Positions 12,549-48,041 of a stretch of 64,000 nucleotides of DNA are shown one piece after another. The stretch's first letter is position 1, and each line of letters opens with the position of its first letter. Below the pieces are notes generated by a model, which was not told where the DNA came from, ran no database searches, and worked only from the letters and a program-made list of their open reading frames with translations. Position numbers and translations under genes: made by a program. The stretch lies in IMG/VR virus record IMGVR_UViG_3300040801_004532, positions 184,137 through 248,136 of that record, one strand, 5' to 3'.

Positions 12549-15544
12549 AAATAGTCAATCCTACCTACAAAATTCAGGATGAAGACAATAGCATCTTCAC
12601 TCTGAGAAAACGGGACTACGAAAATATTTTACCCTTAGCGAGACAAATTCTTGAACCAGTAAGAGAAATTGGTTTCGAAATTACAGAACTTGAACTAAGA
12701 GATTCAAGATTTTCTTCCGGTGAACTTTCAAGAACGATAAAGCAAACTCTTGTTATTCGCCTTCAAAAAGGAACCTCAAATATTGATCTTTCAATATTCG
12801 TTCCAAAATTAGTTGACGACAATTATATATTTATCAATGGAAGGAAAAAGATTCCGTTATTTCAATTATTTGATATTCCTGTTGTAACAAGGGGCGAGTC
12901 GATAAAATTAAGAACTAATGTAGCAACATTGATGGTGGTTGTAGAAAAAGAGGAACCAAAAATTAATATAAGTTTTCTCGGAAAGAAAGTGCCTCTATCA
13001 TTATTGATGTTAGCATATTATGGCCCAGAAGTACTAAACAAACGATTTAATTTATCACAGTTCAATATAAAAGATACAAGTAATTTAATGGAGTTGTTAA
13101 TCGAAGATATAAAACTATTTTGGATTGAGTCAAAGGGTTATACCCAAGATGATTTTATAGTTGAATTAGGACGCGATTATTCAAGATATAATGCAAAATC
13201 AAAGGGCGAAGATGTTGTATATGCCCTAGATTTGATTCCAAAAATTGATCCAATCACAGCTCAATTTTTACAAACCGGATCAATTATCGAAGAGTTATTA
13301 TTGGCATTACAAACAGGCGATATAGATGATACGTTATTTACAAATAAGAGAATTAGATGTTTTGAATATATGATCTTTTCTAAACTATCTAAAATTGTTT
13401 TCGATCTTTGTTTTTCAAACAGGACAAGCAGACAACCAAAATTCAACATTAACTCAAATCAAATTATTTCAGAATGTAATGTTTCAGATATTGTTCAGTT
13501 TGATTTTTCAATCAACCCAATTGAAGAATTAACTAAAATGTCAAGAGTTAGTCTTTTGGGTCCAGGCGGATTTAAAAGAGAAAACATTCCAAGGCATTTA
13601 CGAGATATTTGCCCGTCGATGTTTGGACGGATTTGTCCGGTTGATACACCAGATCGTGATAATTGTGGTGTATTGCAAAATTTTGTTTCAAATGTGAAAC
13701 TTGAGGAAAACATGAGGTTCTCAGAGGAAATCTCTGAACAACCAATATCAATTCCTGTTTCGATGGTTCCGTTCTTGAAGAATGATGATCCAACCAGATT
13801 ACAAATGGCATCATCACAAATGAGACAGGCGATTCTTTTAAAAGATTTTGATGAACCCATGATAAAATCTGGATGTGAGGGACTATATACAGACAAAACC
13901 CAATTTGTCAAAAAGGCGAAGAAAAATGGGGAAGTGATCCACGTTGACAACAAGTATTTAATTGTAATCTATGATGATGGTGAAGCAGAAATCTTTGACA
14001 TAATGTATCGAAAAATTTATGTTGAGCACATGGATTTTATGAATATCTATGTCAAAGCGGGTGACAAGTTCAAGGCTGGGGATATACTTGCTGAAAGTAA
14101 TTTTTGTAAAGATGGAAATATATGCTTTGGAAAAAATCTCTTGACAGGAGTTATGGTTTACTACGGTAATAATTATGAAGATGGAATTGTTGTTTCAGAT
14201 AGACTTGTTAATGAAGATGTTTTAACATCAGTACATTTTAAAGATCTATCATTTACACTACCACCAAATAAGGTCTTGTTATCATTACAAGAAGGAAGAT
14301 ACAAGCCGTTGCCGAAAGCTCTGGAACAATTAAGCGCAGGGTCTCCTTATGCAAAGATAAAAACTCTTTCTACCGATGATATGTATTCTGTATTTTCAGA
14401 AGAAATTTCATTGGAAGCTGAAAAATCATTTATTATTCCTGAGGTAAATATCTATGCAAATACATGGAATGATGAAATTCCTGAGTTCAATGACTGGATT
14501 GAAAAGACAGTCAGTGAACAACAAGAGCGAGATGCAGGATTAAGAAAAATTATAAAGGACAAACTTCCATCCGAAATATCTAAGAAATTCATTAAGGAAA
14601 GCGGATTGGAACTGTCTTCATTTGTTGGAAAGTATAAAATGAAGCGAGAAAAAATAAACGGCATCCATATTGAAATGTATGGTATTCACTTTAGAAAAAT
14701 AAAAGTGGGTGATAAAATAGCGAACAGGCATGGAAATAAAGGAGTTATTTCCAGAATTGTTCCTCATGAAAAGATGCCAAAATTAGAAGATGGAAGACAT
14801 CTTGATATCTGCATCAATCCATTGGGTATTATCTCAAGAATGAACATCGGACAGTTGTTCGAATTGCAATTATCAATGTCTTTATATGATTTACAACAGA
14901 CATTGCTAAAAATGATTAACGAAGAAAAACCCCAAGACGAGATTAAAAAATATCTTATGGGGTATATAAATACTGTGGATAAAACAAAAACCGGATGGTA
15001 TTCAGAGCAATTTGAGAATCAATTACCAAAAGAAATCACAAACGAATTTGTTGCAACCTTAGTTTTAATTCAACCACCTTTTGAGTCATGTAAATTAGAT
15101 GATATTAAAAAGGCTCTTGAATATACCGGTACCGAATTTAAACAAAAGGTTTATGATCCGTTATCAAAAACCTATTTTAAAAATCCCATTGCTGCAGGTT
15201 ACATTTATTTCCTAAGGATGGTTCATATTGCAGAAGAAAAATTAGCAGCGAGAGGCATTGGAGCATATGCAAAAAGAACCCTTCAACCATTAGGGGGAAG
15301 GAAAAATAAAGGTGGCCAAAGATGCGGCGAAATGGAAACAGCTTGTATTATTGGTCATGATGCACCAATAAATCTATTTGAATTTCTTACTACAAAATCT
15401 GACTGTATAGATTTGAAAAATTTGTACATCAGGAAGTTTATTGATCCAAATTTAGTTGACGAAAGTAAAGAGGTTGATTCCATTCCGGAATCTGTAAAAT
15501 TGTTAAATGCGTACTTAACAGTTATTGGAGTAAAACAAAAATGA
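12545..15544 (+). CDS. rpoB: DNA-directed RNA polymerase beta subunit (phage-encoded, unsplit)
   Basis: GRICPVDTPDRDNCG, MASSQMRQA, NYEDG, GDKIANRHGNKGVIS, INPLGIISRMNIGQ, GGQRCGEME. ATGA overlap with rpoC. Confidence 0.97.
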   Translation: MKIVNPTYKIQDEDNSIFTLRKRDYENILPLARQILEPVREIGFEITELELRDSRFSSGELSRTIKQTLVIRLQKGTSNIDLSIFVPKLVDDNYIFINGRKKIPLFQLFDIPVVTRGESIKLRTNVATLMVVVEKEEPKINISFLGKKVPLSLLMLAYYGPEVLNKRFNLSQFNIKDTSNLMELLIEDIKLFWIESKGYTQDDFIVELGRDYSRYNAKSKGEDVVYALDLIPKIDPITAQFLQTGSIIEELLLALQTGDIDDTLFTNKRIRCFEYMIFSKLSKIVFDLCFSNRTSRQPKFNINSNQIISECNVSDIVQFDFSINPIEELTKMSRVSLLGPGGFKRENIPRHLRDICPSMFGRICPVDTPDRDNCGVLQNFVSNVKLEENMRFSEEISEQPISIPVSMVPFLKNDDPTRLQMASSQMRQAILLKDFDEPMIKSGCEGLYTDKTQFVKKAKKNGEVIHVDNKYLIVIYDDGEAEIFDIMYRKIYVEHMDFMNIYVKAGDKFKAGDILAESNFCKDGNICFGKNLLTGVMVYYGNNYEDGIVVSDRLVNEDVLTSVHFKDLSFTLPPNKVLLSLQEGRYKPLPKALEQLSAGSPYAKIKTLSTDDMYSVFSEEISLEAEKSFIIPEVNIYANTWNDEIPEFNDWIEKTVSEQQERDAGLRKIIKDKLPSEISKKFIKESGLELSSFVGKYKMKREKINGIHIEMYGIHFRKIKVGDKIANRHGNKGVISRIVPHEKMPKLEDGRHLDICINPLGIISRMNIGQLFELQLSMSLYDLQQTLLKMINEEKPQDEIKKYLMGYINTVDKTKTGWYSEQFENQLPKEITNEFVATLVLIQPPFESCKLDDIKKALEYTGTEFKQKVYDPLSKTYFKNPIAAGYIYFLRMVHIAEEKLAARGIGAYAKRTLQPLGGRKNKGGQRCGEMETACIIGHDAPINLFEFLTTKSDCIDLKNLYIRKFIDPNLVDESKEVDSIPESVKLLNAYLTVIGVKQK

Positions 15545-37098: not shown

Positions 37099-37119
37099 TA
37101 TACTATTCCTCCGAGTTGA

Positions 37120-37644
37120 TTAACCAAATTTCATTCTCTTTTTAATTGTTTTAAAGACAGCGTCCCAATTGCCATCTTTAATAAATATCGCTTTATCATC
37201 AATGTAAAAATCAGCAGCCAATTTTTCTGCTGTAACTCGATCAAAATAAATACCGTTTAATTTTAACCAATTCTCAACACTTCTAATTTGATCTATGTGA
37301 TCTCCACCCGTCTCTTTTGCATTTTCTTCTGAAGCCCTTGTTGTAAAGATCACAATTTCATATCCATTATTCTTTAGCCAATCAATCACTTTTTTCGCCC
37401 CTTCAAATGGATCATCATAAATTGTACCATCTTCGTAACCTTTTGAGTACTTATGAATCGTTCCATCTAAATCAATCATCGCTCTTCGACTCATTTGTTC
37501 TACCATAATCCAGTTTTCATTTGGGTAAGCTACCGAGATGACTTGTCTTTTCTTTTTCTTTTTCTTTGTTGGAAACGAATCAATAGCAAAACCACCAACG
37601 GCTTCTGTTCCTTGTAACTTTTCTAGGTATTTTTTTATGTTCAT
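37120..37644 (-). CDS. HAD-superfamily phosphatase with N-terminal extension
   Basis: MIDLDGTI (motif I), IFTTR, K..ADFYIDDK. Likely start ATG 37644 after AAGGA; track start is 37671. Confidence 0.8.
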   Translation of the reverse strand: MNIKKYLEKLQGTEAVGGFAIDSFPTKKKKKKRQVISVAYPNENWIMVEQMSRRAMIDLDGTIHKYSKGYEDGTIYDDPFEGAKKVIDWLKNNGYEIVIFTTRASEENAKETGGDHIDQIRSVENWLKLNGIYFDRVTAEKLAADFYIDDKAIFIKDGNWDAVFKTIKKRMKFG

Positions 37645-37676
37645 TTCTATCCTTATCGGTTGGATACTCATTTTTA

Positions 37677-37688
37677 TTTTGTTCTAAA
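37677..37688 (-). promoter_or_regulatory. Motif A (TTTAGAACAAAA), candidate late promoter
   Basis: Intergenic, 33 nt upstream of the HAD/tube operon. Recurs at 44638, 48085 and 56137. Confidence 0.55.
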
Positions 37689-37721
37689 AAATTACTAATG
37701 TCTCAAGTTTAAAATGACTAA

Positions 37722-37743
37722 AACTATATATATAAATTAGTGA
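37722..37743 (+). promoter_or_regulatory. Motif B (AACTATATATATwAATTAGTGA), candidate early/middle promoter
   Basis: 21/22 identity with 45734-45755. Both copies end 40-41 nt before the first ATG of a + strand islet. Confidence 0.6.
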
Positions 37744-37783
37744 TATAGATGTTTTAACTGTTTTTTTTAAGGAGGTGTACACG

Positions 37784-38158
37784 ATGAGTGCGAGGAGTGG
37801 TTTTTCAATTGGTCAAATAGTTCTATTTATTTTAGCTTTATTATGGTTTTTTGATGATGATGATAAAGAAAACAAAGCGGATGTTAATTCAGATGAGCCA
37901 GAAATAACTCAATCTATTAAGGAAACAGCAGACTCATTAGTAGGCACTATAAATGAAACAGCAGACAAGATTAATGTGGCAGCAGATAATTTTTTAAAAT
38001 CAAAAGAACCCGATAGTAAAGAAACCGAAGGCGAAAAGAAAAATGAAACCCCGCCTGATATAATCGACGACAAAAAAGAAGAAGAAAAACAACTCGATCC
38101 CCCCTTAATTGAGGAAATGGAAAAGGAACAAGAATCTCTAACCGGCAGAAAGCTTTAA
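37784..38158 (+). CDS. Membrane-anchored acidic hypothetical protein
   Basis: Hydrophobic N-terminus IGQIVLFILALLWFF, SD AAGGAGG, ATG at 37784. Confidence 0.6.
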   Translation: MSARSGFSIGQIVLFILALLWFFDDDDKENKADVNSDEPEITQSIKETADSLVGTINETADKINVAADNFLKSKEPDSKETEGEKKNETPPDIIDDKKEEEKQLDPPLIEEMEKEQESLTGRKL

Positions 38159-38167
38159 AGGAGCACT

Positions 38168-39193
38168 ATGGAACAAGCAAGAGAATTGGTAATATTCGAT
38201 AAAATATTTAGAAATGAAAATTATGAACTTTTTTTTAATACCATGTCTGGATTCGAAATTCTTCGTGGTGTAAATGGGAAAGAAGATCCGTTTTGGTTAG
38301 AACTTCCATCTCTATTAGACATTGGAATTATGGGAACCTGCTATCACAATTGTCCATTTTGTTATCAAGGACATATTAAAGAACCAAATATGACTTTTGA
38401 AAATTACAAATGGATAATTAACCAGGTGAAACATCATACAAATCAGGTTGCTCTTGGTGGACGAGGGGACCCAAATAAACATAAGGACTTCAGAAAAATA
38501 GTTGAATATTCCAGGAATAGTGGTGTGGTTCCGAACTATACAACAAGCGGAATCGATCTGACGGATGAAGAAGTGGAGACATCAAAACTATGTGGTGCAA
38601 TAGCCGTGAGTGACTACGAAAAACCCTTTACATACCAAGCCTTAAAAATGTTCATGGATGCAGGTATAAAAACAAATATCCATCAAATTTTCTCATCAGG
38701 AACATTTACAAAATCAATGAAAATAATCTATGGTTATAGTCCATGGCAAAGTCAAAAAAGAGAAAAGGTTGACACTGAAAGATTGAATGCTGTAGTGTTT
38801 CTCCTATTCAAACCTCAAGGAGAAGGAAAAAATATACCAGCATTTATTCCAAGCGAATATCAACTAAAGACATTTTCAGAGATGGTATTAAAAGGCAAAG
38901 CAAAATTCAAAATTGGTATGGATAGTTGTTTGGTTAATCATTTAATAAGATATGCAACTCCAACGGATGGACAAATGATGTCACTTGATACCTGTGAGGG
39001 TGCAAGAATGTCAGCATATATTTCACCTGATTTAAAAATGATGCCTTGCAGCTTTTCAAGAAAAAGCAGTGGAGTACAACTATCAAATAAAAAATCAATA
39101 TCTAATGTATGGGAAAATTCAAGGATTTTCAAATCCTTCAGAAGTAAACTGAAAAGAAAACCGGATAAATGTCCAATAAATTTTGAGGTATAA
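38168..39193 (+). CDS. Radical SAM/SPASM-like protein
   Basis: CYHNCPFC, QVALGG, NYTTSG, C-terminal CEGA..MPCSF..CP. Confidence 0.9.
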   Translation: MEQARELVIFDKIFRNENYELFFNTMSGFEILRGVNGKEDPFWLELPSLLDIGIMGTCYHNCPFCYQGHIKEPNMTFENYKWIINQVKHHTNQVALGGRGDPNKHKDFRKIVEYSRNSGVVPNYTTSGIDLTDEEVETSKLCGAIAVSDYEKPFTYQALKMFMDAGIKTNIHQIFSSGTFTKSMKIIYGYSPWQSQKREKVDTERLNAVVFLLFKPQGEGKNIPAFIPSEYQLKTFSEMVLKGKAKFKIGMDSCLVNHLIRYATPTDGQMMSLDTCEGARMSAYISPDLKMMPCSFSRKSSGVQLSNKKSISNVWENSRIFKSFRSKLKRKPDKCPINFEV

Positions 39194-39195
39194 CC

Positions 39196-39726
39196 ATGAA
39201 GATAAAAACAGACTTTGTAACAAACTCATCTAGTTCATCATTTATAGTTGTTTTTCCTGAAAGGGTAAAATCATTAAACCAAGTAGAAAGATTCATTTCC
39301 CAAGGATATTCAAACACGATATTGAGGGACATAAAAAATCAACAGGCATTAAATGTTAAAAGAAACAGGGAAAAGATAAAAAAACTCTTGATAAAAGAAT
39401 TATGTGATGGAAGTTTAATGGGCAATTATATAGTCCCAGAAAAGGTTGAATATTCTGATTTTCAGAATAAGTTTTGCAAAAGAGAAGGAATTAGCACCAA
39501 AGAATTATATGACAACAAACAATGGTATCACTTATTTCGTGATGAATTTAATCGGGAACAAACAAGGTGGGCAACAGATGCAGCAAACAAGTTTCTTGAA
39601 ACACTTGAAGAAAACTGTTATGTCTATTATTTCCACTATGGAGACGAAGGAGGGGGACTCTACGCACAAATGGAACACGGAGATATCTTCAGAAAGCTCC
39701 CCAATATCAGAATCAGTCACCATTGA
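39196..39726 (+). CDS. Second 'MKIKTDFVTNSSS' family protein
   Basis: N-terminal 13 residues identical to ORF 617-1000. Confidence 0.7.
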   Translation: MKIKTDFVTNSSSSSFIVVFPERVKSLNQVERFISQGYSNTILRDIKNQQALNVKRNREKIKKLLIKELCDGSLMGNYIVPEKVEYSDFQNKFCKREGISTKELYDNKQWYHLFRDEFNREQTRWATDAANKFLETLEENCYVYYFHYGDEGGGLYAQMEHGDIFRKLPNIRISHH

Positions 39727-39772
39727 AAATCAAAACAAAAAACACAAGTTAGATTTTACAGACGGGAATGAA

Positions 39773-40279
39773 ATGGTTTATGAGACATATTGTGCAGTTG
39801 AACTCGTTGCTATTCCGCCAAATTTTGACATTAAAAGTCATTTAACTATGCGAGAACAAGCAGGAATATTCGAATATACAAATGTTAGTATTAAACATCT
39901 TGAAGGCATTTCAATGGGCGTACAAAATACACCTGTTTTTACCCTTCTTAATAATCCAAATGTAGCCTTACAATCTATGATATATTTCTTATATATATTA
40001 GATCAATTAGGATTTATTATAAGAGGAATAGGTAGTGGTTTCCATATGGCTATGCATGGTAATTATGAACAATTGTTACGATCATATGAGCGTGCAAGGG
40101 GAACTGTATATATCCAAAATCATAGAGCAGATACTATAAACTTTGCTATAATAAATATGATTCAAATTCTAAATAATGAAACAATTGAAAAAGCTATAAA
40201 AATCGCAGCTTGTGAATATAATGAACAGAAGCTAGCAACCGAAAAAATAGAATCATTACTCCAAACAACAGGAGGATAG
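39773..40279 (+). CDS. Hypothetical protein
   Basis: Likely start ATG 39773, since the track start at 39446 overlaps the upstream gene by 280 nt. Confidence 0.5.
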   Translation: MVYETYCAVELVAIPPNFDIKSHLTMREQAGIFEYTNVSIKHLEGISMGVQNTPVFTLLNNPNVALQSMIYFLYILDQLGFIIRGIGSGFHMAMHGNYEQLLRSYERARGTVYIQNHRADTINFAIINMIQILNNETIEKAIKIAACEYNEQKLATEKIESLLQTTGG

Positions 40280-40281
40280 AA

Positions 40282-40785
40282 ATGATGCGACGAAGAACAT
40301 TTTGGATTTGTATGGCTTTCATTTCCTTGTGTCTTGTTTTACTCTTCGTTCCGCTTTGTTATAGCGAAACGGACGCGACAAGGATTGGTAAGGTCAAATG
40401 TGTGAACCGAGCCATTCAGGGAGATGATTATATTGAAGTATTGAGAATGGTAGACCCAGATAACCCATTTGTATCAATCTTTTTCACTCGGATAGACTCT
40501 GGAAAAGTATTTGCTATGGCAAACCCGAGTAATACATCTATAGCAACTCGCCTTGTTGGAGAAATTCCAATCGACAAAAATGGTAAAAGGATCATTGATA
40601 CATCTCCTGCTGTCCTTGGAAAATTATCACAATCAATTGGAACCAAGGAGATGAATATAGCTCGTTTCTATGACAAAGAAAAGGATGCATTAGTCTATAT
40701 CGTTTATTCAACAAAATGGCTGGAAGGATCCTTGAAACATTCAATCTCCGTTGTACCATTAGGGAATCCACTAACCTCAAAATAA
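40282..40785 (+). CDS. creA: CreA family periplasmic protein
   Basis: Signal peptide, DPDNP.VS.F, PSNTSIA.R..G.I, YDKEKDALVYIVYSTKWLEGSLKHSISVVP closely follow the CreA consensus. Confidence 0.8.
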   Translation: MMRRRTFWICMAFISLCLVLLFVPLCYSETDATRIGKVKCVNRAIQGDDYIEVLRMVDPDNPFVSIFFTRIDSGKVFAMANPSNTSIATRLVGEIPIDKNGKRIIDTSPAVLGKLSQSIGTKEMNIARFYDKEKDALVYIVYSTKWLEGSLKHSISVVPLGNPLTSK

Positions 40786-40797
40786 GGAAACGAAACA

Positions 40798-41364
40798 ATG
40801 AAAAAAGTGTTACTGGTCGGAATAGCGATGATGTTAATTTTCGTTTCTTCGTCTTATGCAGATTGGTTAGATTTTGATCGTCATGGAACAAGAATTTTCT
40901 ATGGTGTCAATGATATGACGACAATTGGGCCGGATCCTTCAGAAACTGACAAATATTCGTGGGGATCGGTCAGTTATCTTTTAGAAAAAGATATATATAA
41001 ATGGTTATCAATTCAAACGACTCTTGGTGTTGGTTATTTAGAATCAGATATCCAATCCACTCCATCCATCGAAGGACGTATCTTATTAAAGGCTCATTAT
41101 AGTATCTTCCATATATCAATTGGGGGTGGGCCTGCTTATTTGTTTGAAACAGATGATATTCCTGATTTGGCAGATTCACCAATATACGGCATTATATCAG
41201 GAGAAGCAGGAATTCATTTTATCGAAGAAGAAAAGTTTGATGTTAGAGCAGGGTATGCTGTTGAACATCTGTCCTCTCCCCTTCACCAAGGAAAAAAAGG
41301 TGATAATCAAGATCCGGGGTGGAATGTTGGAGGAATCGTCATACAAGCAACGTGGAGGTTCTGA
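40798..41364 (+). CDS. Outer-membrane beta-barrel, PagL/acyloxyacyl hydrolase (lipid A deacylase)-like
   Basis: Signal peptide (SYA-D), alternating amphipathic strands, EHLSS His-Ser dyad, PGWN, C-terminal WRF. Confidence 0.65.
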   Translation: MKKVLLVGIAMMLIFVSSSYADWLDFDRHGTRIFYGVNDMTTIGPDPSETDKYSWGSVSYLLEKDIYKWLSIQTTLGVGYLESDIQSTPSIEGRILLKAHYSIFHISIGGGPAYLFETDDIPDLADSPIYGIISGEAGIHFIEEEKFDVRAGYAVEHLSSPLHQGKKGDNQDPGWNVGGIVIQATWRF

Positions 41365-41609
41365 TGAATGTGGCTCAATGGTTGGCCAAAATAGTAGAAG
41401 AAAAACATAAACACTGCTGTTATAACGGAGGAAAAAAGCATAATTATAAATCCATATGGGAACGACACCCAAGTGGGTTTAAGGCTAGGGAGTGGGAAGG
41501 AACAGTAGCTCAATTTGAATCCTTGGCATTTACAGAAGTTTATATGGGCGAAGTTTGTCGGTGGTGCGGTGATATAATTCATCGAGATGAACTAAAAGAA
41601 AAAACTTAG
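41364..41609 (+). CDS. Small Cys/His-containing hypothetical protein
   Basis: TGATG overlap with upstream stop, SD GGAGG, HCC..H and CRWCG. Confidence 0.55.
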   Translation: MNVAQWLAKIVEEKHKHCCYNGGKKHNYKSIWERHPSGFKAREWEGTVAQFESLAFTEVYMGEVCRWCGDIIHRDELKEKT

Positions 41610-41617
41610 TTCTAACG

Positions 41618-41661
41618 AAAAAAAAGAGTCGAAGGGATTTCTCCCCCCGACTCTTTTTTTT
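41618..41661. terminator. Bidirectional Rho-independent terminator between convergent operons
   Basis: A8-GAGTCG..CGACTC-T8. Confidence 0.85.
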
Positions 41662-41689
41662 GCCTGGCAGTATAGGCTACTAGGCTGGT

Positions 41690-43684
41690 TTATTCGATGA
41701 AGAAGTTTAACAAGATCTGTTCTGTTGTTCTTGTTGGTTGTAGGATTATATCAACATGGAATTTCTTTGTTTTACGTTCATAATCTGTAGCTCCTACATC
41801 AACAGAGTAACTATCAAGACCACGTCTGTTTTTAATATCTTCAAGGAAATCAACAATAGCTGCTGAAACCTGTCCCCATGTAATTTGGTCATTTTGCTCA
41901 AAAATAAAGTTTCGGCAGAATTGCTCAATTGCTCTCTTTGCATAAAGAACAAGTCTTACAATATTTAGATCTTGAAGAGCACTTGCTCTAGCTTGTGAGG
42001 TCAATTGTCCCCAAACAACATACCCATTTGAAAACTTAACAATTGGGTTTAGTTGTTTTAGATATAGCTGATCTCTTTGAGATAGTCTTGGATTAAATCT
42101 CAACTCTTTAATTGAATCAATTGCAGCTCTTTGGAAACCAGCCGCTGCAAACCACAGTTCAGAAACTGTATCATTTCTTGGAATAATATATGACATATGG
42201 TAAATAGGTGAAAACCAAATATCATCTCCTGTAAATGGATCAGATACTTTATTAAATGGTTCATATAATGCAACAAAATAGTTATTGAATACATTAGTAT
42301 CTTGACGAGTTGAAATTGCATTATTGACAGTTGAGTTGTCACCATTGTCCATGATACCAACACAATCTCGTCTGGTTTGACATAGTGTGCTGATAGCTGT
42401 TTTTACATCTGCTGGATAACCAGCATCATAAACTAGGGTGAAGTAAATATTTTCAGTATCAAGTATTTGGTCATCAATAAGTCCAGAATAAGCTTGTTCC
42501 AATAGGGTTGGAGCTGAATATGGGTACCAAGTTCCACCTGGATCTGTTGCTGGAGTTTCAATATTTAAAGAACCATTTGGTTTTCTTAGACTTCCTTCTG
42601 ATCCTTTCTTTAAAGGTTTTGGATCTCCAGAAATAAATGGAGTGGCAACACTTGCATATGACTCTTTAATTAGGTAAGTAATATCTGAGTTTACATCAAA
42701 TGATGTAGTATTTCCATTCCATCCTGTTGTTGCTCCAGTTAGATTTCTATCTGAGAAGACATTGATTTCATCACCAACACTTCCCCCTGAAGCTCCCAAC
42801 CAACCCCAAATCTCATTTCCTCTTCCATCCTTTGCAATTACTACATAATTTGCGTTTCCTGTTTCTGGATTTGTTTCCCAGTCAGAGAAATCCTGCTTAT
42901 TATCTGTAATCTTAGCAGAACCAGCTGTTAAAGTAACAGAAACAGTACCAATGTTATTATCGTAATTCTTTGCGATTAAATAATATCCATCAGTATAATC
43001 TTCATTTGATAGAACCATTTCAGCCCGTAATACAGTTGAATAATTTTCAAGAATGTTTGCGATGAAAATTGAATCGCCCGCTGAATCAACTGCTTCTGGA
43101 TCAAATGAAACTTCAAAAGACTCAATGATAACATCTTCGCCATCTGATTGTTTTTCATAAACATCTAGAACATAGACGCCATTTAATGTTGGGTTTGAAT
43201 GCTCCGTAAATCTTACACCAAGAGCGTTATAGTAATCACCTCTACCAATTGGTCTGATGATACAAAGAGGTTTTACATCCCCTGATGTTTCAAGTTGTGT
43301 TTTAATATCGTTTTCATCATTTAGTGTTGCGTCGTAATCAACCCAAACAACTGTTGTAGCATCTGCTGGGGCAAGTCTTGTGTTGATTCTGATAAACGAA
43401 TATGCAGCATCATCTGGAAGCAATCTCATCCAGTATAAACCACCAGACTCACCTAGATGATTATAAACGACATATGGAGCTTGACCATAATTCTTTGTAT
43501 AATCTTTAATATCCGGTTCGCCCCACTCTGCAATAAAGTCAGATCTTGAACCTACAAAGATTAATTCGTTATCTCTTCCTTTTCTTGTAAAACCACTTAT
43601 AAATCCAATGGTTGAAGGAACCACTTGGATATATTGTGATAAATCTATGATTTTGGTAAAAACACCTGGCGAAACATTTGCCAT
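41690..43684 (-). CDS. Contractile tail sheath protein
   Basis: SPGVFTKIID, GDYYNALGV, YDAG, ELWFAAAG..RA, RDQLYLKQLNPI, LNIVRL, FIFEQND. Confidence 0.95.
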   Translation of the reverse strand: MANVSPGVFTKIIDLSQYIQVVPSTIGFISGFTRKGRDNELIFVGSRSDFIAEWGEPDIKDYTKNYGQAPYVVYNHLGESGGLYWMRLLPDDAAYSFIRINTRLAPADATTVVWVDYDATLNDENDIKTQLETSGDVKPLCIIRPIGRGDYYNALGVRFTEHSNPTLNGVYVLDVYEKQSDGEDVIIESFEVSFDPEAVDSAGDSIFIANILENYSTVLRAEMVLSNEDYTDGYYLIAKNYDNNIGTVSVTLTAGSAKITDNKQDFSDWETNPETGNANYVVIAKDGRGNEIWGWLGASGGSVGDEINVFSDRNLTGATTGWNGNTTSFDVNSDITYLIKESYASVATPFISGDPKPLKKGSEGSLRKPNGSLNIETPATDPGGTWYPYSAPTLLEQAYSGLIDDQILDTENIYFTLVYDAGYPADVKTAISTLCQTRRDCVGIMDNGDNSTVNNAISTRQDTNVFNNYFVALYEPFNKVSDPFTGDDIWFSPIYHMSYIIPRNDTVSELWFAAAGFQRAAIDSIKELRFNPRLSQRDQLYLKQLNPIVKFSNGYVVWGQLTSQARASALQDLNIVRLVLYAKRAIEQFCRNFIFEQNDQITWGQVSAAIVDFLEDIKNRRGLDSYSVDVGATDYERKTKKFHVDIILQPTRTTEQILLNFFIE

Positions 43685-43873
43685 TAGCGTATCCTCCTGT
43701 TTATTATCTTTTCTCTAAAATATAAGTGAGTTGCCTTTTCAATAACAACAACGATCTCCTTGAAACTTTTTCTTCTTAAATAATTTCTCTATATTTTAAG
43801 ATACGCTTTCCAAAATGATCTACCTATTGCTAGGTAAATCAATTTCTTCCTTGATTTTCCTTTTACATTAAGT

Positions 43874-44593
43874 TTACAAATACAAATACCATACAAAAAT
43901 TAATCTTCTCTGAGCTGTTTTAATTAATGATGGAAATGTAACACGTGCAAAAATGCTAAATTGACCACTATATGCCGGCGCAGTACTTTCAGCAGAAAAT
44001 AGTCCTGCCTCACTCAATTGTTCTCCATTTGCGTCATTAACCCCAACTGTTATTTGAATTTTTACAACCAAAAGTTTATCATCATTCAATGCATCGGCTT
44101 CAAATGAAGGATTGCCTCCCGGGACTGAGTCAAAGGTCTTTTTATAATAACCTGTTTTTGGATAAACTCCACCAGAAGGAGTTGGATCACCCATAATCTG
44201 CCAATCACCATAACCAGCAGCAGTAGAATCAGTAATCATAACCGGCGAAGCTAAGCCAGTATCTGTAATAATTGGAGGAACAGGATCAAGAGGATCAGCG
44301 GGTCTAACTCCCCCCTCTCCAATTCCAAACCAAGAAACATATTCATCTTTTGTTGGGGTTGCAGATGAATTAACATTTACTAATCTTTGAGCTAACATTT
44401 CTCTACCAAGATATAAAACTAAATTGCTTTTATGGACCAACTTTTTATTTCCAGTCTCATCCGCTTCAAAGATTTGAACTTCACCTTGTGGTCTTCGTTC
44501 AGAGGCCTTGGGCGAATTACCCATACCATCACTCAAACAATTATCGCCATAGATCTCTTTGATAACAACCTCTGTGTCTTTAGTTTTGCTCAT
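43874..44593 (-). CDS. Probable tail/baseplate-associated protein (DUF3751/tail-fibre-proximal-like)
   Basis: WFGIGEG, LSEAGLF..IFARVTFP..K. Confidence 0.5.
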   Translation of the reverse strand: MSKTKDTEVVIKEIYGDNCLSDGMGNSPKASERRPQGEVQIFEADETGNKKLVHKSNLVLYLGREMLAQRLVNVNSSATPTKDEYVSWFGIGEGGVRPADPLDPVPPIITDTGLASPVMITDSTAAGYGDWQIMGDPTPSGGVYPKTGYYKKTFDSVPGGNPSFEADALNDDKLLVVKIQITVGVNDANGEQLSEAGLFSAESTAPAYSGQFSIFARVTFPSLIKTAQRRLIFVWYLYL

Positions 44594-44637
44594 TTTTTAA
44601 GATATCCTTCTCTAATGGAATCGAAATATACTTTATA

Positions 44638-44649
44638 TTTTGTTCTAAA
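44638..44649 (-). promoter_or_regulatory. Motif A copy, candidate late promoter of the sheath operon
   Basis: TTTAGAACAAAA, 45 nt upstream of the ATG at 44593. Confidence 0.55.
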
Positions 44650-44677
44650 TAATACACTCGTTTAGTTCCAACCGACG

Positions 44678-44739
44678 AAAAAAAATGGAGAGAGATGAAA
44701 GATGAAGCTCCATCTGTTCAAAAATCATCTCCCCCCATA
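44678..44739 (-). terminator. Terminator with an extra internal hairpin
   Basis: On the - strand: ATGGGGGGAGATGA..TCATCTCTCCCAT-T tract, enclosing the stem AGATG-GAGCTT-CATCT. Confidence 0.65.
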
Positions 44740-44763
44740 GGAATCCTACACAATACTGTTGTA

Positions 44764-45633
44764 TTACTCCTCTAAGAATGCCCCACAATTAGGGCAATAT
44801 TTAAAAGATGATTTTGATTTTGTTCCACAAACTTTACATTGTAGACGTCTCTTTACAGTCAAAGGTTCTTGAATAGTTGATCCTCCTGACGTATTTCCTT
44901 TTAGTCTGATAATTATAGTTTGTGATTGTTCTAGCTCCCCAATTGTACCATAACGAAATTGCTGATTACACTCACTACCTTTTACTGTAATTCCTTCATC
45001 ATCAAGAGGAACACTATCAACCATTTCAATTCCAATATCTCTCGCGCTTGATTGGTTGAAAAAAGCACTATTAGACATTTTAACTGACTCGTTTGATAGG
45101 TTCTCTACTGGACTAGCAGAACTTTGTGTTTCGCCTCCGGTAAATTTATTATCACAGGTATATTTCACTTCATCGTTCCACCCATAATATGTACTAAATG
45201 GTAACCAATAATAAGAAGGATATCTGTGATGATGATGGTGATGATGCTCCTCATGAATAATTGTTTTCTTAATAAGTTCTGGTTTTTCTTTTTCAAACGC
45301 AAACTCAATTCTTATAAAACCATCATCTATTTTATCACCACGGTAGTCTTGAATTTCTTTTGTCTTTTGAATAAACCTAAATCTATTCCGTGCAACATTT
45401 CCACTTAAGAATCCTTCGAGCTCTGTTGTTTCATTTGGTCCAAGAATCAACGAACTGCCGTCAATTACATCTACACCATCAATGTGGATTTTAACAGATG
45501 CACGTCTTGAATTGAGGTTTTTTAGAAGTAAAGAATATTCACTTCCAAAAGGCAGGTAGACTGCGTCGTCTCTTATTCTAAGAATACGACCATTACATTT
45601 TACTTCGGCAACGAACTGATCTTTATAAGTCAT
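44764..45633 (-). CDS. Hypothetical phage protein with His tract and C-terminal zinc ribbon
   Basis: VYLPFGSEYSLLLKN..IHIDGVDV, HEEHHHHHHHR, CKVCG..CPNCG. Confidence 0.65.
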   Translation of the reverse strand: MTYKDQFVAEVKCNGRILRIRDDAVYLPFGSEYSLLLKNLNSRRASVKIHIDGVDVIDGSSLILGPNETTELEGFLSGNVARNRFRFIQKTKEIQDYRGDKIDDGFIRIEFAFEKEKPELIKKTIIHEEHHHHHHHRYPSYYWLPFSTYYGWNDEVKYTCDNKFTGGETQSSASPVENLSNESVKMSNSAFFNQSSARDIGIEMVDSVPLDDEGITVKGSECNQQFRYGTIGELEQSQTIIIRLKGNTSGGSTIQEPLTVKRRLQCKVCGTKSKSSFKYCPNCGAFLEE

Positions 45634-45733
45634 GACGATTTCCTCCTTGACAGGTCACGGACTAGAACCTCATTTTTTTTTAGTTTAAAGTCCGTTGGTG
45701 AATCGTGTAGGTCTTCCTATATATATATGTTCT

Positions 45734-45755
45734 AACTATATATATTAATTAGTGA
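45734..45755 (+). promoter_or_regulatory. Motif B copy
   Basis: AACTATATATATTAATTAGTGA, 40 nt before ATG 45795. Overlaps a divergent motif-A-like TTAGAACA at 45728-45735. Confidence 0.6.
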
Positions 45756-45794
45756 ATGGATGGAAACTTATTACTATTATTTATGGAGGATAAA

Positions 45795-45959
45795 ATGAAA
45801 GAACTAGTTAGATGTAACAATTTTTCAAAGTGTCCGTCAAGGGATTGCCCCCATTGGGAGCCTCACGAAATAGACCGAACATGTAGCGAGGATACCTGCG
45901 AGGGGTGGAAAGTTGCGTTTGACCAATACAACAAGAAGGTAAAATGCATTAAAATTTAA
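45795..45959 (+). CDS. Small Cys-rich protein
   Basis: SD GGAGG, ATG 45795, 6 Cys in 54 aa. Confidence 0.55.
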   Translation: MKELVRCNNFSKCPSRDCPHWEPHEIDRTCSEDTCEGWKVAFDQYNKKVKCIKI

Positions 45960-45978
45960 TTATTTAAAGGAGGTCTTT

Positions 45979-46239
45979 ATGAAGACAAAATTCATTTGTC
46001 CTCAATGTAGGGATGAGGGACGCCCAACTGTCAACTTGATAGTCACAGGGGCAAATCCAAGACCGGAATGTCCTGTTTGCGGCTTCAAATGTCGTAGGTA
46101 TGGAAATACGATGATTGATCAATCGGAAGATCGTCGGGGGGCATTCAACAGCGTTGGAAACTGGGATGCCCGTTTCACGAAATACGATCGAGGCGGAAAG
46201 GATCGAATCTGGCACTCAAGTTGGGGCGCCGAAAATTAA
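45979..46239 (+). CDS. Small zinc-ribbon protein
   Basis: SD AAGGAGG, CPQC..CPVCG. Confidence 0.6.
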   Translation: MKTKFICPQCRDEGRPTVNLIVTGANPRPECPVCGFKCRRYGNTMIDQSEDRRGAFNSVGNWDARFTKYDRGGKDRIWHSSWGAEN

Positions 46240-46253
46240 AGGAGATTAAATAA

Positions 46254-46598
46254 ATGACAACCCTAGAAGAGATGATTCCAGACTATCCCGTTCATAGAAT
46301 AACCCCCAAATGTTGTCGTTGTGGAGGCGAATTGACGTTGGAAGATAATCTTGGAAACGGCGTAATGTTATATACATGCCCTTTGTGTGATTATCCTCCT
46401 CCCGAGGATGATCACAATCTCTTCTGTGTCTCAAGTCAATTGGAAACTCGGGTGTATAAAAATCATTGTTGGAATTGTGGTGCAGCAATTGATTCTACCT
46501 TTGCAACCCCTTCGAGAACGCCCGGTATGGGCTACTACTGCCCTCGCTGTGGTGAAGATCTTACAAAGTGGAAACTAATGAAAGGAGGTGTTGTTTAA
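46254..46598 (+). CDS. Double zinc-ribbon protein
   Basis: SD AAGGAG, CCRCG..CPLC and CWNCG..CPRCG. Confidence 0.65.
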   Translation: MTTLEEMIPDYPVHRITPKCCRCGGELTLEDNLGNGVMLYTCPLCDYPPPEDDHNLFCVSSQLETRVYKNHCWNCGAAIDSTFATPSRTPGMGYYCPRCGEDLTKWKLMKGGVV

Positions 46599-46723
46599 TG
46601 CCAAAAAAAGACGGAAGCGGTCCAAAAGGGCAAGGTCCAAAAGATGGACGTGGCGGCGGAACTGGCCGTAACACGGGAAAAGGAAGTGGTTCAAAAAGCG
46701 GGGGTCAGAAAGGCAACTGCTAA
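46598..46723 (+). CDS. 41-aa Gly/Lys-rich peptide, DUF5320-like (missing from the track)
   Basis: Translated by hand as MPKKDGSGPKGQGPKDGRGGGTGRNTGKGSGSKSGGQKGNC. SD AAAGGAGG and TAATG overlap. Confidence 0.65.
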   Translation: MPKKDGSGPKGQGPKDGRGGGTGRNTGKGSGSKSGGQKGNC

Positions 46724-46728
46724 TCAGT

Positions 46729-46824
46729 TTGGAGATGGGGAGGTCCGACTGTTGGATACGGGAGCGATCGAATCCTGTTACCGCGCAGTTGGAGATTCGA
46801 TCACTCCCCATCTCCAATTTTTTT
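46729..46824 (+). terminator. Large multi-stem terminator/structured RNA between convergent genes
   Basis: 14-bp basal stem TTGGAGATGGGGAG/CTCCCCATCTCCAA, internal stems, T7 tail. Confidence 0.6.
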
Positions 46825-46832
46825 GCTTTAAA

Positions 46833-48041
46833 TTATTCAAATAATGGTTTGTCAATAACAGGTCTTTCGATTGAGTGTTTATAGTTCTTCCAATCATCTT
46901 CAATTGTTTGTGGCCACATATAAAATTTTGCATCAAAGTTTTTAATCAGCCCAGCTTTTGAAAGTTCTGCTTTAACAATATAACCACCAACTAGAGGATG
47001 TAATCCTTTTCGTTTTAGATAGCTTGTTTGTCCTTCAAAACAACCACATTGCATACCAAAAATTGAACCGAACATTGCTTGCATTTGAATATGTAAATGA
47101 CCTGCCAATAGAAATCTCACACTTGGTTTATCTTTTACATCTCTTGAAATATTTGCAAGTTCAGTATATGCAATTTGTTCAACGCCCTTTTGAATACGAT
47201 ATGAATAAGAATACGGCACACCTCCAGAAGGATGCCAAAGCTTCATATCTACACCAGGAAGGATTGGAATATCTGCATCATCAAATCCAATGTAGTGAAC
47301 ATCTGATCTTTGTGCCTCAATTGCTAATAAAGGATTATGCCCTCCGCCTCTTTTAATAAATGAATAATCGTGGTTACCACCAAGCATGTACCATTCAAAA
47401 CCTCTTGGTAAATTAACAATTACAGAGTCCTCTTGTTCTTCAGCCGATAATGCATAAACCTCAAATTGTTGGCCGGGATAAACATTATAACCAGCGCAAA
47501 CATCGCCAGGTGTAAAAATATATTTTACTCCCTTTTTCCTACATATTTCACAAAATTCATTTAACGCTGTTAGTTGACATTCTTTTGAACCAAAATGTAA
47601 ATCGGATGCAACACCAAAAATAATTTCTTTGTCTTCAAGGGGATCATTAATTGGATCTCCTTCCGATGCAACATCAGAACTTAAAATGATATTTTTATCA
47701 TCACAAATAATTTCATATCCCTGTTTTCTGAAATAATCAATCAATTCAAAAATTTCACCAGGCGAACAGCTTAACTCATCACATAATGTTTCACCTCTGA
47801 CTGTTTTTCTTTTTTCTAGTATTGTAATAAATGCCTGATCAATAGACTCTTTTTCTTCAACGCCTCCATAATCTTCATCAGTTAAATGTTCCCTTTTTAC
47901 CTTTGAAATATATTTATAAAATGTTTTGATATTGCTCCCATAGCCAAACTCTTTTTGTGCTCGATGATAAATATTTTTTGTCTCTGCGCCGTTTAATATT
48001 TCCTGTTTTACAAATTCAATTAAACCAGGATATAAAGTCAT
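46833..48041 (-). CDS. Calcineurin-like metallophosphoesterase with N-terminal HTH-like domains
   Basis: SDLHFGS, GDVCAG, GNHD, HPSGG, GHLH. Likely start ATG 48041 after GGAGG. Confidence 0.85.
   Translation of the reverse strand: MTLYPGLIEFVKQEILNGAETKNIYHRAQKEFGYGSNIKTFYKYISKVKREHLTDEDYGGVEEKESIDQAFITILEKRKTVRGETLCDELSCSPGEIFELIDYFRKQGYEIICDDKNIILSSDVASEGDPINDPLEDKEIIFGVASDLHFGSKECQLTALNEFCEICRKKGVKYIFTPGDVCAGYNVYPGQQFEVYALSAEEQEDSVIVNLPRGFEWYMLGGNHDYSFIKRGGGHNPLLAIEAQRSDVHYIGFDDADIPILPGVDMKLWHPSGGVPYSYSYRIQKGVEQIAYTELANISRDVKDKPSVRFLLAGHLHIQMQAMFGSIFGMQCGCFEGQTSYLKRKGLHPLVGGYIVKAELSKAGLIKNFDAKFYMWPQTIEDDWKNYKHSIERPVIDKPLFE

What the first reader, a model, noticed from the sequence alone, without database searches (positions are those of the whole stretch)
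37722..46824. Two self-contained + strand islets inside the late module, each opened by the same 22-bp motif B
Seen: AACTATATATAT(A/T)AATTAGTGA at 37722 and 45734, ending 41 and 40 nt before the first ATG. Each sits back-to-back with a motif A or A-like copy, and each islet ends in a strong terminator (41618-41661, 46729-46824). Inference: motif B is a second promoter class (early/middle) or a regulator site. Its alternating TA core could melt easily or extrude a small hairpin, as some phage RNAP promoters require. The islets behave as moron-like expression cassettes.
Basis: partly seen in the sequence, partly recalled or inferred. Interest (0 to 1): 0.64.

Follow-up and report, generated by a model that had tools for sequence, protein, structure and literature searches.

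The report
Early-promoter cassettes in jumbo phage tail module
The repeated 22-bp motif is most likely the early-gene promoter of an uncultured giant phage that carries its own RNA polymerases. The two "islets" are small early-gene cassettes with variable cargo, wedged between late tail genes, which is a familiar design seen here in a new phage clade.

Summary
Motif B sits at 37722 and 45734, about 40 nt before the first ATG, back-to-back with a motif A copy, and each islet ends in a strong hairpin plus T-run.

The window is the last 64 kb of a 248-kb viral contig with two sets of multisubunit RNA polymerase beta'/beta genes. Genome-wide, motif B is all-or-none. There are 13 sites at 26-33 bits and nothing else above 10 bits. 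All are on the + strand and in non-coding DNA, and most lie about 61 nt before the first start codon of a + strand unit.

In 80 related contigs the same motif recurs 106 times, 105 of them on the strand opposite the sheath gene. It always leads the cassettes at the same syntenic sites. Cargo ranges from nothing to 9.6 kb.

Motif B resembles the AR9 early (virion RNAP) promoter AAATATATATTAT-N6-G. Motif A (AGAACA-N6-AAA) resembles AR9's late promoter AACA-N6-TA/G and precedes the terminase and tail genes.

Best reading: B is the early promoter and the islets are early cassettes at insertion hot spots. No RNA data exist, so the start site is inferred. The hairpin-extrusion idea is rejected. This is a new member of a known kind.

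The parts
37722..37743 (+). Motif B copy 1, the predicted early (virion-RNAP type) promoter of islet 1. The start site is predicted at G 37742 (T20-G21 of the motif).
   Evidence: Exact match. PWM score 32.0 bits. T20/G21/A22 are 90-96% conserved over 105 sites. Start site inferred by analogy with AR9 T-1/G+1.
45734..45755 (+). Motif B copy 2, the predicted early promoter of islet 2. The start site is predicted at G 45754.
   Evidence: (30.1 bits).
37670..37689 (-). Motif A copy (TTTAGAACAAAATAAAAATG), the predicted late promoter of the HAD-like/tube/baseplate operon. It is divergent from B copy 1.
   Evidence: 25.4 bits. It resembles the AR9 late consensus AACA-N6-TA/G.
45716..45735 (-). Motif A-like copy (TTAGAACATATATATATAGG), the predicted late promoter of 44764-45633. 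It abuts and overlaps B copy 2 by one base.
   Evidence: 16.6 bits. The same abutting TGTTCT+B arrangement occurs at 22 of 105 sites.
44630..44650 (-). Motif A copy upstream of the virion protein gene 43874-44593.
   Evidence: 24.1 bits.
37784..38158 (+). Islet 1 gene a: a 124-aa membrane-anchored protein with no family match. It is found only in the closest relative, L018.
38168..39193 (+). Islet 1 gene b: a radical SAM/SPASM-like protein (phrog_7293). This is the conserved core cargo, present in 45 of 80 relatives.
   Evidence: Homologs occur in RB16/KP27-type T4-like phages.
39196..39726 (+). Islet 1 gene c: a 176-aa protein of unknown function (phrog_7397), present in 34 relatives.
39578..40279 (+). 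Islet 1 gene d: unknown function, start codon uncertain, present in 34 relatives.
40282..40785 (+). Islet 1 gene e: a CreA-family secreted protein, present in 19 relatives.
   Evidence: Pfam PF05981, E = 4.9e-23. Also.
40798..41364 (+). Islet 1 gene f: a 188-aa protein with a signal-peptide-like N-terminus, found only in L018.
41364..41609 (+). Islet 1 gene g: an 81-aa Cys-rich protein, found only in L018.
41618..41661 (.). Bidirectional intrinsic terminator shared by islet 1 (+) and the sheath gene (-).
   Evidence: Its outer stem is conserved just downstream of the sheath gene in relatives.
41690..43684 (-). Tail sheath gene (late). It was the anchor for the comparative analysis.
   Evidence: phrog_19666, E = 1.3e-73. 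Also.
45795..45959 (+). Islet 2 gene a: a 54-aa Cys-rich protein with no relatives found in the 80 loci.
45979..46239 (+). Islet 2 gene b: an 86-aa zinc-ribbon-like protein.
46254..46598 (+). Islet 2 gene c: a 114-aa double zinc-ribbon-like protein, present in 14 relatives.
46598..46723 (+). Islet 2 gene d: a 41-aa Gly/Lys-rich peptide ORF with a strong RBS and 52% GC.
46729..46824 (+). Long hairpin plus T7 that terminates islet 2. There is no U-tract on the - strand side.
   Evidence: It is unique in the genome and in the loci and has no Rfam match.
9882..15544 (+). RNA polymerase beta' (9882-12548) and beta (12545-15544) homologs, called set 2 here. This is the putative non-virion RNAP, and it lies in a long B-led + strand unit.
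   Evidence: Pfam Rpb1 domains 1, 2, 3, 5 and Rpb2 domains 3, 6, 7.. Unit boundaries.

Best explanation
Motif B (consensus C-TATATATAT-W-AAT-W-A-N-T-G-A) is the early-class promoter of this uncultured jumbo phage. It is most likely read by a virion-delivered multisubunit RNA polymerase, with transcription starting at or next to the conserved TG about 5 nt past the AT block. That places the start near 37742 and 45754. Each islet is a complete early transcription unit: B, a leader of about 40 nt, an RBS, one to seven small accessory genes, and an intrinsic terminator. These units sit on the opposite strand between late tail operons. The late operons are driven by motif A (AGAACA-N6-AAA), the counterpart of the AR9 non-virion RNAP late promoter. 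The two islet positions are conserved insertion hot spots in the clade: promoter and position are kept while the cargo is gained, lost and swapped. Shown here: motif statistics, positions, conservation, synteny, presence of two RNAP sets, and terminators. Inferred: that B is a promoter at all, its early timing, which RNAP reads it, and the exact start site.
For: (1) The distribution is all-or-none. There are 13 sites at 26-33 bits in 248 kb and nothing else above 10 bits apart from palindromic shadows of the same sites. All 13 are on the + strand. Twelve lie in called non-coding DNA and the 13th overlaps only a doubtful ORF call. Non-coding DNA is 6.8% of the genome.
(2) Geometry is fixed. A good RBS and start codon lie 60-73 nt from the motif start at 9 of 13 own sites, and the median is 61 nt (IQR 56-66) over 105 unique clade sites.
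(3) Seven B sites sit at - to + strand switches. Eight of 13 are followed by an intrinsic terminator within 0.45-3.9 kb.
(4) The motif is conserved across the clade. There are 106 hits in 1.03 Mb of 80 related loci (sheath 59-96% aa identity), 105 of them opposite to the sheath gene, and core positions are 90% or more invariant, mostly 95-99%.
(5) Presence and absence track the cassettes. 37 of 41 loci have exactly one B in the HAD-to-sheath gap, which ranges from 98 nt with no B to 9.6 kb. At a third site, gaps of 388 nt or more carry B in 11 of 13 loci, while gaps of 184 nt or less carry it in 0 of 35.
(6) The genome and its complete relative G001 each encode two beta-like RNAP genes. The own genome also has two beta'-like genes. 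No sigma-70-family gene and no T7-like RNAP were found.
(7) The sheath's closest cultured relatives are phiR1-37, PBS1/AR9 and S6-like jumbo phages.
(8) AR9 early promoters are AAATATATATTAT-N5-TG, with G as +1, and AR9 late promoters are AACA-N6-TA/G. A review states that every RNAP-encoding jumbo phage has such an AT-rich, highly conserved early motif centred near -10.
(9) Motif A precedes the terminase, tail and baseplate genes, and also RNAP set 1, where it follows a strong terminator. RNAP set 2 lies inside a 41.8-kb B-led unit that ends at a terminator immediately before a motif A. This matches the AR9 logic in which the non-virion RNAP is early and the virion RNAP is late.
(10) Cargo downstream of B is mostly small proteins of unknown function, zinc-ribbon proteins and a tRNA array, as expected for early genes.
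Against: There is no transcript evidence. No RNA run holds this sequence, so neither the start site nor the timing is observed. Thirteen promoters is few compared with 41 in AR9, and the record is only about 79% complete. The spacing between the AT core and the TG differs by 1-2 nt from AR9. The RNAP genes are unsplit and closer to bacterial RpoB/RpoC than AR9's are, so this is not simply an AR9 relative. Sequence similarity does not tell which RNAP set is the virion enzyme, because both sets best-match AR9 g089. No homolog of AR9 gp226 was found. Four own B sites have no ORF within 100 nt. One B-led gene is an SLT transglycosylase, which is not an obviously early function.
Confidence: 0.75

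Rival explanations
1. B is a promoter, but it is read by the host RNA polymerase holoenzyme as a strong -10-only, AT-rich promoter. On this view it gives immediate-early transcription by the host enzyme, as in T4 or SPO1.
For: The core contains -10-like hexamers (TATATT/TATAAA) at about the right distance from the conserved TG. The 15 nt upstream are T/A-rich, which could act as an UP element.
Against: No -35 element is conserved upstream: information there is 0.37 bits or less per position and G is nearly absent. The invariant C3 and T20-G21-A22 are not sigma-A features. Sigma-70-type matches in 37000-47500 are not enriched (35 found, 38 expected). The all-or-none score distribution fits the reported intolerance of virion RNAPs to deviations better than the graded spectrum of host promoters. 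The phage also carries two RNAPs of its own.
Confidence: 0.1
2. B is a promoter of a middle or continuous class, read by the phage's non-virion RNAP with a different specificity factor rather than by an injected enzyme.
For: Only 13 copies exist. Some B-led units carry functions that are not obviously early, such as an SLT transglycosylase and a radical SAM enzyme. phiKZ has a separate middle class.
Against: No other candidate early motif was seen. A long B-led unit contains one full RNAP set, which must be made before any non-virion enzyme can act. The motif type matches the early class in every studied RNAP-encoding jumbo phage.
Confidence: 0.08
3. B is not a promoter but another strand-specific DNA signal. 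It could be an operator for a regulator, a site-specific nick of the kind that interrupts one strand in T5-type phages, or a recombination site for cassette exchange.
For: The motif is strictly on one strand, has a low copy number, and is 20 nt long and nearly invariant. It sits at the borders of variable cassettes.
Against: The constant 35-45 nt spacing to an RBS and start codon, the location only at the 5' end of + strand units, and the pairing with downstream terminators are promoter properties. A role as a recombination substrate would add to promoter function rather than replace it.
Confidence: 0.05

Closest known systems
AR9/PBS1 early promoters, read by the virion multisubunit RNAP (Lavysh et al. 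2017, PMC5312081)
   Same: Both are extended, AT-only, nearly invariant elements with an alternating TA core, followed a few nt later by a conserved T-G; G is +1 in AR9. Both lack a -35 element. Both are often arranged divergently from a late promoter between virion genes (AR9 g120/g121 and g152/g153). The phage encodes two multisubunit RNAPs. The partner late motif shares the AACA core and the N6 spacing.
   Different: The sequences are not identical: CTATATATATWAAT-WAN-TG here against AAATATATATTAT-N5-TG in AR9, so the core-to-TG spacing is 1-2 nt shorter here. There are 13 copies per genome against 41. All copies are on one strand, whereas AR9 uses both strands (5 + and 2 - in 35 kb). The RNAP genes are unsplit here. 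Proteins are only about 21-31% identical.
Early (virion RNAP) promoters of phiKZ-like and other RNAP-encoding jumbo phages in general (Sokolova et al. 2020 review, PMC7598289)
   Same: [quoted passage not shown] Motif B fits that description.
   Different: This is an uncultured freshwater-sediment clade with no experimental data. The late motif is AR9-like (AACA), not phiKZ-like (TATG).
PeSLs, the promoter-early stem-loop cassettes of T4-like phages (PMC2839356, PMC4122927)
   Same: In both, a short conserved early-promoter element heads small variable ORF cassettes in plastic regions between conserved core genes. Indels between relatives coincide with the element.
   Different: PeSLs are host-sigma-70 early promoters fused to a terminator stem-loop and lie in tandem arrays. 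Here the element is a phage-RNAP-type motif, and the terminator is at the far end of the cassette. Recombination at B has not been shown.
Morons of temperate phages (own knowledge: Juhala et al. 2000; Hendrix et al. 2000)
   Same: Both are autonomous promoter-gene-terminator units inserted between genes that are adjacent in relatives. Islet 2 also has a deviant GC content.
   Different: Morons are defined by expression from the repressed prophage and use host promoters. Here the promoter is the phage's own class-wide early promoter, and part of the cargo is conserved across the clade.
N4 virion RNAP hairpin promoters (own knowledge)
   Same: They too are early promoters read by an injected phage RNAP.
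   Different: N4 promoters need a 5-7 bp stem with a 3-nt loop extruded from supercoiled DNA. Motif B has no stable hairpin, and the RNAP type differs (single-subunit against multisubunit).

Membership tests
Jumbo-phage virion-RNAP early promoter class | The phage encodes two sets of multisubunit RNAP beta/beta' homologs. | tested here: met
   Rpb2_6 hits at genome 161384-162652 and 198217-199440. Rpb1_2 hits at 156458-156964 and 194816-195250. The complete relative G001 also has two beta-like genes.
Jumbo-phage virion-RNAP early promoter class | [quoted passage not shown] | tested here: met
   Fourteen positions are 90% or more invariant, mostly 95-99%, over 105 sites. The score distribution is bimodal, at 26-33 bits against 10 bits or less.
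Jumbo-phage virion-RNAP early promoter class | Located upstream of early operons: non-structural genes, small unknown genes and the non-virion RNAP genes. | tested here: inconclusive
   The cargo is non-structural and mostly of unknown function, and one RNAP set lies in a B-led unit. 'Early' itself is inferred, not measured.
Jumbo-phage virion-RNAP early promoter class | The transcription start lies a fixed few nt downstream of the motif. | not testable with these tools
   A conserved T20-G21 is seen at the position equivalent to AR9 T-1/G+1. No RNA run holds the sequence.
Jumbo-phage virion-RNAP early promoter class | Transcription is independent of new protein synthesis and of host RNAP, and the RNAP is present in virions. 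| not testable with these tools
   This needs a cultured phage-host pair.
AR9-type late promoter (for motif A) | An AACA core, a 6-nt spacer, then conserved start-site bases, upstream of virion genes. | tested here: met
   The PWM shows AGAACA followed by conserved A/T-A-A at spacer positions 7-9. Sites precede the terminase, virion protein, baseplate and RNAP set 1 genes. The motif is short, and reversed-sequence controls give about 40% as many hits, so individual sites are uncertain.
AR9-type late promoter (for motif A) | Recognition needs deoxyuridine in the template strand and a gp226-like specificity subunit. | tested here: inconclusive
   No gp226 homolog was found by direct search, although that protein family is very divergent. 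There is no dUTPase and no ThyX, but there is a weak thymidylate-synthase-superfamily hit. The base composition of the DNA is unknown.
Sigma-70/sigma-A host promoter | A -35 TTGACA element 16-18 bp upstream of a -10 TATAAT element. | tested here: not met
   Nothing is conserved at -35. The motif was not picked up by the sigma-70 scan, which found no enrichment.
N4-type hairpin promoter | A stable small hairpin in the promoter strand. | tested here: not met
   The single-stranded DNA minimum free energy is 0 to -1.2 kcal/mol, no better than shuffles.
Moron | An own promoter and terminator, inserted between genes that are adjacent in relatives. | tested here: met
   L040 and L086 have the flanking genes 98-171 nt apart with no cassette and no B.
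Moron | Expressed from a repressed prophage, conferring a host phenotype. | not tested
   No evidence of a temperate lifestyle was sought. An RNAP-encoding jumbo phage is expected to be virulent (own knowledge).

The most novel reading that the evidence does not exclude
In this clade the early programme is strictly unidirectional. All 13 B promoters in this genome face one way, as do 13 of 14 in a complete 277-kb relative with terminal repeats and 105 of 106 in the related loci, whereas late promoters use both strands. This could mean that early transcription by the injected RNAP is coupled to directional entry of the genome, as in T7-like transcription-driven internalisation. In addition, the invariant 20-nt B element could double as a PeSL-like recombination handle that shuffles early cassettes into fixed slots between late genes.
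Probability: 0.12. Interest if true: 0.65.

Novelty: new member of a known kind. Interest (0 to 1): 0.38.

Why it matters
The result gives a ready-made two-class promoter map (early B, late A) for a large, uncultured clade of sediment jumbo phages. Eighty related contigs were kept (150 confirmed, of which the tool keeps 80), and the phage's RNAP genes are unsplit. That allows temporal annotation of hundreds of unknown genes from sequence alone. It extends the AR9-type promoter logic (AT-rich early motif, AACA late motif) well beyond the cultured uracil-DNA phages. It also shows natural gain and loss of early-gene cassettes at fixed slots inside the tail module, which points to accessory, probably host-interaction, genes worth testing. 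If a host is found, the near-invariant 20-nt element is a practical handle for in vitro study of a virion RNAP, whose promoter-recognition mechanism is still unknown for any jumbo phage.

Tried and rejected
- Nucleotide search of the 10-kb region against cultured phages found no match.
- tRNA and Rfam scans of the window found nothing, so the 96-nt hairpin is not a known RNA family.
- The hairpin-extrusion (N4-like) idea was rejected by single-stranded DNA folding.
- The sigma-70 scan showed no enrichment.
- No RNA runs hold the sequence. Only two DNA metagenome runs do, one from freshwater sediment and one from a microbial mat.
- Laying their contigs on 43000-48900 gave only fragments of relatives. 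One contig carries a B copy followed by another relative's leader, and one covers islet gene c at about 92% identity. This allows no conclusion on presence or absence of islet 2.
- A search for an AR9 gp226 (non-virion RNAP specificity subunit) homolog found nothing, which is uninformative given the divergence.
- Telling virion from non-virion RNAP by similarity failed, because both sets best-match the same AR9 subunit, g089.
- No sigma-70 region 2 gene and no T7-like RNAP were found. The T7-like control rang nowhere, so that negative result is weak.
- A literature search for the motif string found nothing relevant.
- A word-based homolog search for islet gene c found only one distant relative.

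Full report
**What the window is.** The window is bases 184137-248136 of a 248,136-bp linear viral record. The record is about 79% complete and about 34% GC. Its only run matches are two DNA runs that hold part of it, one from a freshwater-sediment metagenome and one from a microbial-mat metagenome. Nucleotide search finds no cultured relative. The tail sheath protein is about 30% identical to those of phiR1-37, PBS1/AR9 and the Staphylococcus S6-like jumbo phages.

The genome encodes two sets of multisubunit RNA polymerase beta'/beta homologs:
- Set 1 lies at genome 155783-162880.
- Set 2 lies in the window at 9882-12548 (beta', Rpb1 domains 1, 2, 3 and 5) and 12545-15544 (beta, Rpb2 domains 3, 6 and 7).

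No sigma-70-family gene and no T7-like RNAP were detected. This is therefore an RNAP-encoding jumbo phage.

**Checking the observation.**
- The two 22-mers lie at 37722 and 45734 and are the only matches in the window at up to 3 mismatches. No shuffle reached two matches.
- The first start codons with good Shine-Dalgarno sites are at 37784 and 45795.
- Motif A copies lie on the other strand, about 36 nt away at the first site and overlapping by one base at the second.
- 41618-41661 is a perfect A8-stem-T8 bidirectional terminator. 46729-46824 is a 96-nt structure closed by a 14-bp stem and followed by T7. Both fold far better than shuffles.
- The flanking - strand genes are tail sheath, tube-like, baseplate hub and baseplate wedge.

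**Motif B genome-wide.**
- A position weight matrix iterated on the whole genome converges on exactly 13 sites scoring 26-33 bits.
- Apart from palindromic shadows of the same sites, nothing else exceeds 10 bits, and reversed-sequence controls give nothing.
- All 13 sites are on the + strand, although only 56% of coding sequence is (p about 6e-4).
- Twelve of the 13 lie wholly in DNA that my rough gene caller left non-coding, which is 6.8% of the genome. The 13th overlaps a doubtful ORF call.
- Nine sites have a strong RBS and start codon 60-73 nt from the motif start.
- Of the other four, one heads the 30-kb tRNA/tmRNA array and one precedes a tRNA-Ile.
- Seven B sites sit at switches from - to + strand genes.
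- Eight of the 13 are followed by an intrinsic terminator within 0.45-3.9 kb, so 'B to terminator' cassettes are a general feature of the genome.

**Motif B in relatives.** The sheath protein retrieved 80 related IMG/VR loci at 59-96% identity.
- In their 1.03 Mb the own-genome matrix finds 106 sites at 14 bits or more. Of these, 105 are on the strand opposite the sheath gene, as in the window.
- Over 105 unique sites the logo is C3, TATATATAT, W, AAT, W, A, N, T20, G21, A22. The fixed positions are 90% or more invariant, mostly 95-99%.
- Upstream positions carry at most 0.37 bits, so there is no -35 element.
- The start codon is a median of 61 nt from the motif start (IQR 56-66).
- A complete 277-kb relative with terminal repeats has 14 such sites, 13 on one strand. 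It also has two beta-like genes on that same strand.

**Synteny and cassette variation.** The following order is conserved across the clade:
- tube (-)
- HAD-like gene (-)
- [A, - strand][B, + strand]
- cassette (+)
- terminator
- sheath (-)
- two virion genes (-)
- [A][B]
- cassette (+)

Variation at each slot:
- **Slot 1.** Of 41 loci holding both flanks of the first slot, 37 have exactly one B there, always facing the sheath. The gap ranges from 98-171 nt with no cassette and no B (L040, L086), through about 500 nt with a single tiny gene, to 9.6 kb.
- **Slot 2.** 22 of 31 loci carry B, and gaps range from 126 nt to 3.9 kb.
- **Slot 3.** This slot lies between the two virion genes and is empty in the window. 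It is occupied in 13 relatives, and B is present in 11 of those 13. B is absent from all 35 loci with gaps of 184 nt or less.

B therefore travels with + strand cassettes.

Cargo:
- The radical SAM/SPASM-like gene and the next two genes of islet 1 are common, in 45, 34 and 34 loci.
- The CreA-family gene is less common, in 19 loci.
- The first and last two genes of islet 1 occur only in the closest relative.
- Two of the four islet 2 genes have no relative in the set at all.
- Islet 2 is 44.9% GC against 34-35% for its flanks. The conserved half of islet 1 has the phage's own composition.

**What B resembles.** In AR9, transcript 5'-end mapping defined early promoters AAATATATATTAT-(6N)-G(+1), read by the injected virion RNAP. 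It also defined late promoters AACA-(6N)-TA/G, read by the non-virion RNAP. The authors describe oppositely oriented early and late promoters between virion genes, and they note that a single deviation from the consensus can inactivate an early promoter (PMC5312081).

Seven annotated AR9 early promoters that I extracted mostly end in T-G. A review states that in every RNAP-encoding jumbo phage a conserved AT-rich motif centred near -10 is found upstream of early operons and must be the virion-RNAP promoter (PMC7598289).

Motif B matches this description in kind: an AT-only alternating core, near invariance, no -35 element and a conserved downstream T-G. The sequence and spacing are its own, with the core-to-TG distance 1-2 nt shorter than in AR9.

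Motif A (AGAACA, six variable bases, then A/T-A-A) matches the AR9 late consensus in core and spacing. It precedes the terminase gene (window 22764), virion and baseplate genes, and RNAP set 1, where it follows a strong terminator. Motif A is short and noisy, so single sites are less certain.

**Which RNAP reads B.** This step is inferred.
- Set 1 is directly behind a terminator and a motif A, so it looks late and therefore virion-packaged.
- Set 2 lies inside a 41.8-kb + strand stretch. That stretch starts at the B at genome 163773 and ends at a terminator (window 21454) immediately before a motif A (window 21462). Set 2 therefore looks early, as a non-virion RNAP must be.
- The same arrangement of B just downstream of the larger beta gene is seen in the complete relative.
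- Similarity to AR9 subunits does not discriminate between the sets, because both best-match nvRNAP subunit g089.
- No gp226 homolog was found.

**Rejected or weakened ideas.**
- Hairpin extrusion is not supported. The motif with 10 nt of flank folds at 0 to -1.2 kcal/mol as single-stranded DNA, no better than shuffles.
- A host sigma-A promoter is unlikely. There is no -35 element, there are invariant non-sigma positions, and the score spectrum is all-or-none.
- A pure operator, nick or recombination site is hard to reconcile with the fixed distance to the RBS and with the downstream terminators.
- 'Moron' fits the architecture and variability, but not the promoter type, the conserved core cargo or the likely virulent lifestyle.
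- The closer analogy for the evolutionary behaviour is the PeSL cassette of T4-like phages (PMC2839356, PMC4122927). Recombination at B has not been shown.

**Verdict.** The promoter interpretation is well supported by statistics and comparative genomics, but it lacks transcript evidence. The finding is a new member of a known kind: the early, virion-RNAP-type promoter of an uncultured jumbo-phage clade, heading variable early cassettes at fixed slots in the tail module. Three points go beyond the textbook case: the near-absolute co-orientation of all early promoters, the unsplit RNAP genes, and the clean presence/absence link between B and the cassettes. Interest is moderate to low, at 0.38.

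Noticed in passing
genome 53,000-83,000 (outside the window; loci L016, L017) and L008:1878-1953: There is a + strand array of 28 tRNA genes plus a tmRNA (tag ADDYYTEVALAA), headed by a motif B copy at genome 52870. It includes a tRNA with anticodon CUA, which would read TAG. TAG still ends 48 of 362 rough gene calls, and coding density under the standard code is 93%, so recoding is not evident.
   Followed up: partly
window 2778-9234 (+): Directly upstream of the RNAP beta'/beta genes lies a gene cluster with weak-to-moderate Pfam matches to Prok-E2_D, Prok-JAB and two ThiF (E1-like) domains. It looks like a ubiquitin-like conjugation or deconjugation set carried by the phage.
   Followed up: no
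window 9882-15544 (+) and genome 155783-162880: Both RNAP sets are encoded as unsplit beta' and beta genes: 888 + 999 aa for set 2, and 999 aa plus about 1,000-1,360 aa for set 1. AR9 and phiKZ have split subunits. Both sets are as close to bacterial RpoB as to AR9 subunits.
   Followed up: partly
window 45795-46723: Islet 2 is compositionally foreign, at 44.9% GC against 34-35% in the flanks. It ends with a 41-aa Gly/Lys-rich peptide ORF (46598-46723, 52% GC) that has a strong RBS and no family match.
   Followed up: partly
window 46729-46824: The islet 2 terminator is unusually long, at 96 nt with a 14-bp closing stem and an inner branched fold. It is unique in the genome and in the relatives and has no Rfam match. 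It may be more than a terminator.
   Followed up: partly
window 44594-44763, compared with loci L032-L035, L037, L064, L068, L082, L088, L090, L097: The 170-nt gap between the two virion genes is an empty third cassette slot. In 11 relatives the same gap holds a 0.4-1.0 kb + strand cassette led by motif B.
   Followed up: yes
genome 43708-44052 (-), outside the window: This is a weak thymidylate-synthase-superfamily match (39.7 bits, partial). No ThyX or dUTPase was found in this genome or in three relatives. Together with an AR9-like AACA late motif, which in AR9 needs deoxyuridine, this raises the question of a non-canonical pyrimidine in the DNA.
   Followed up: partly
window 997-2061 (+) and 38168-39193 (+): There are two different radical SAM proteins in one 64-kb window. 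The islet copy has SPASM-like features and distant homologs of unknown function in RB16/KP27-type T4-like phages.
   Followed up: partly
genome 14641, 52870, 153042, 163773 (outside the window): Four motif B copies have no ORF with an RBS within about 100 nt. They may drive non-coding leaders or small RNAs. One precedes tRNA-Ile(AAU) by 377 nt.
   Followed up: partly
window 41618-41661 and relatives (e.g. L025:11736-11748, L031:10519-10532): The outer A-tract and stem of the bidirectional terminator downstream of the sheath gene is conserved in sequence in several relatives, even where the neighbouring cassette differs.
   Followed up: partly
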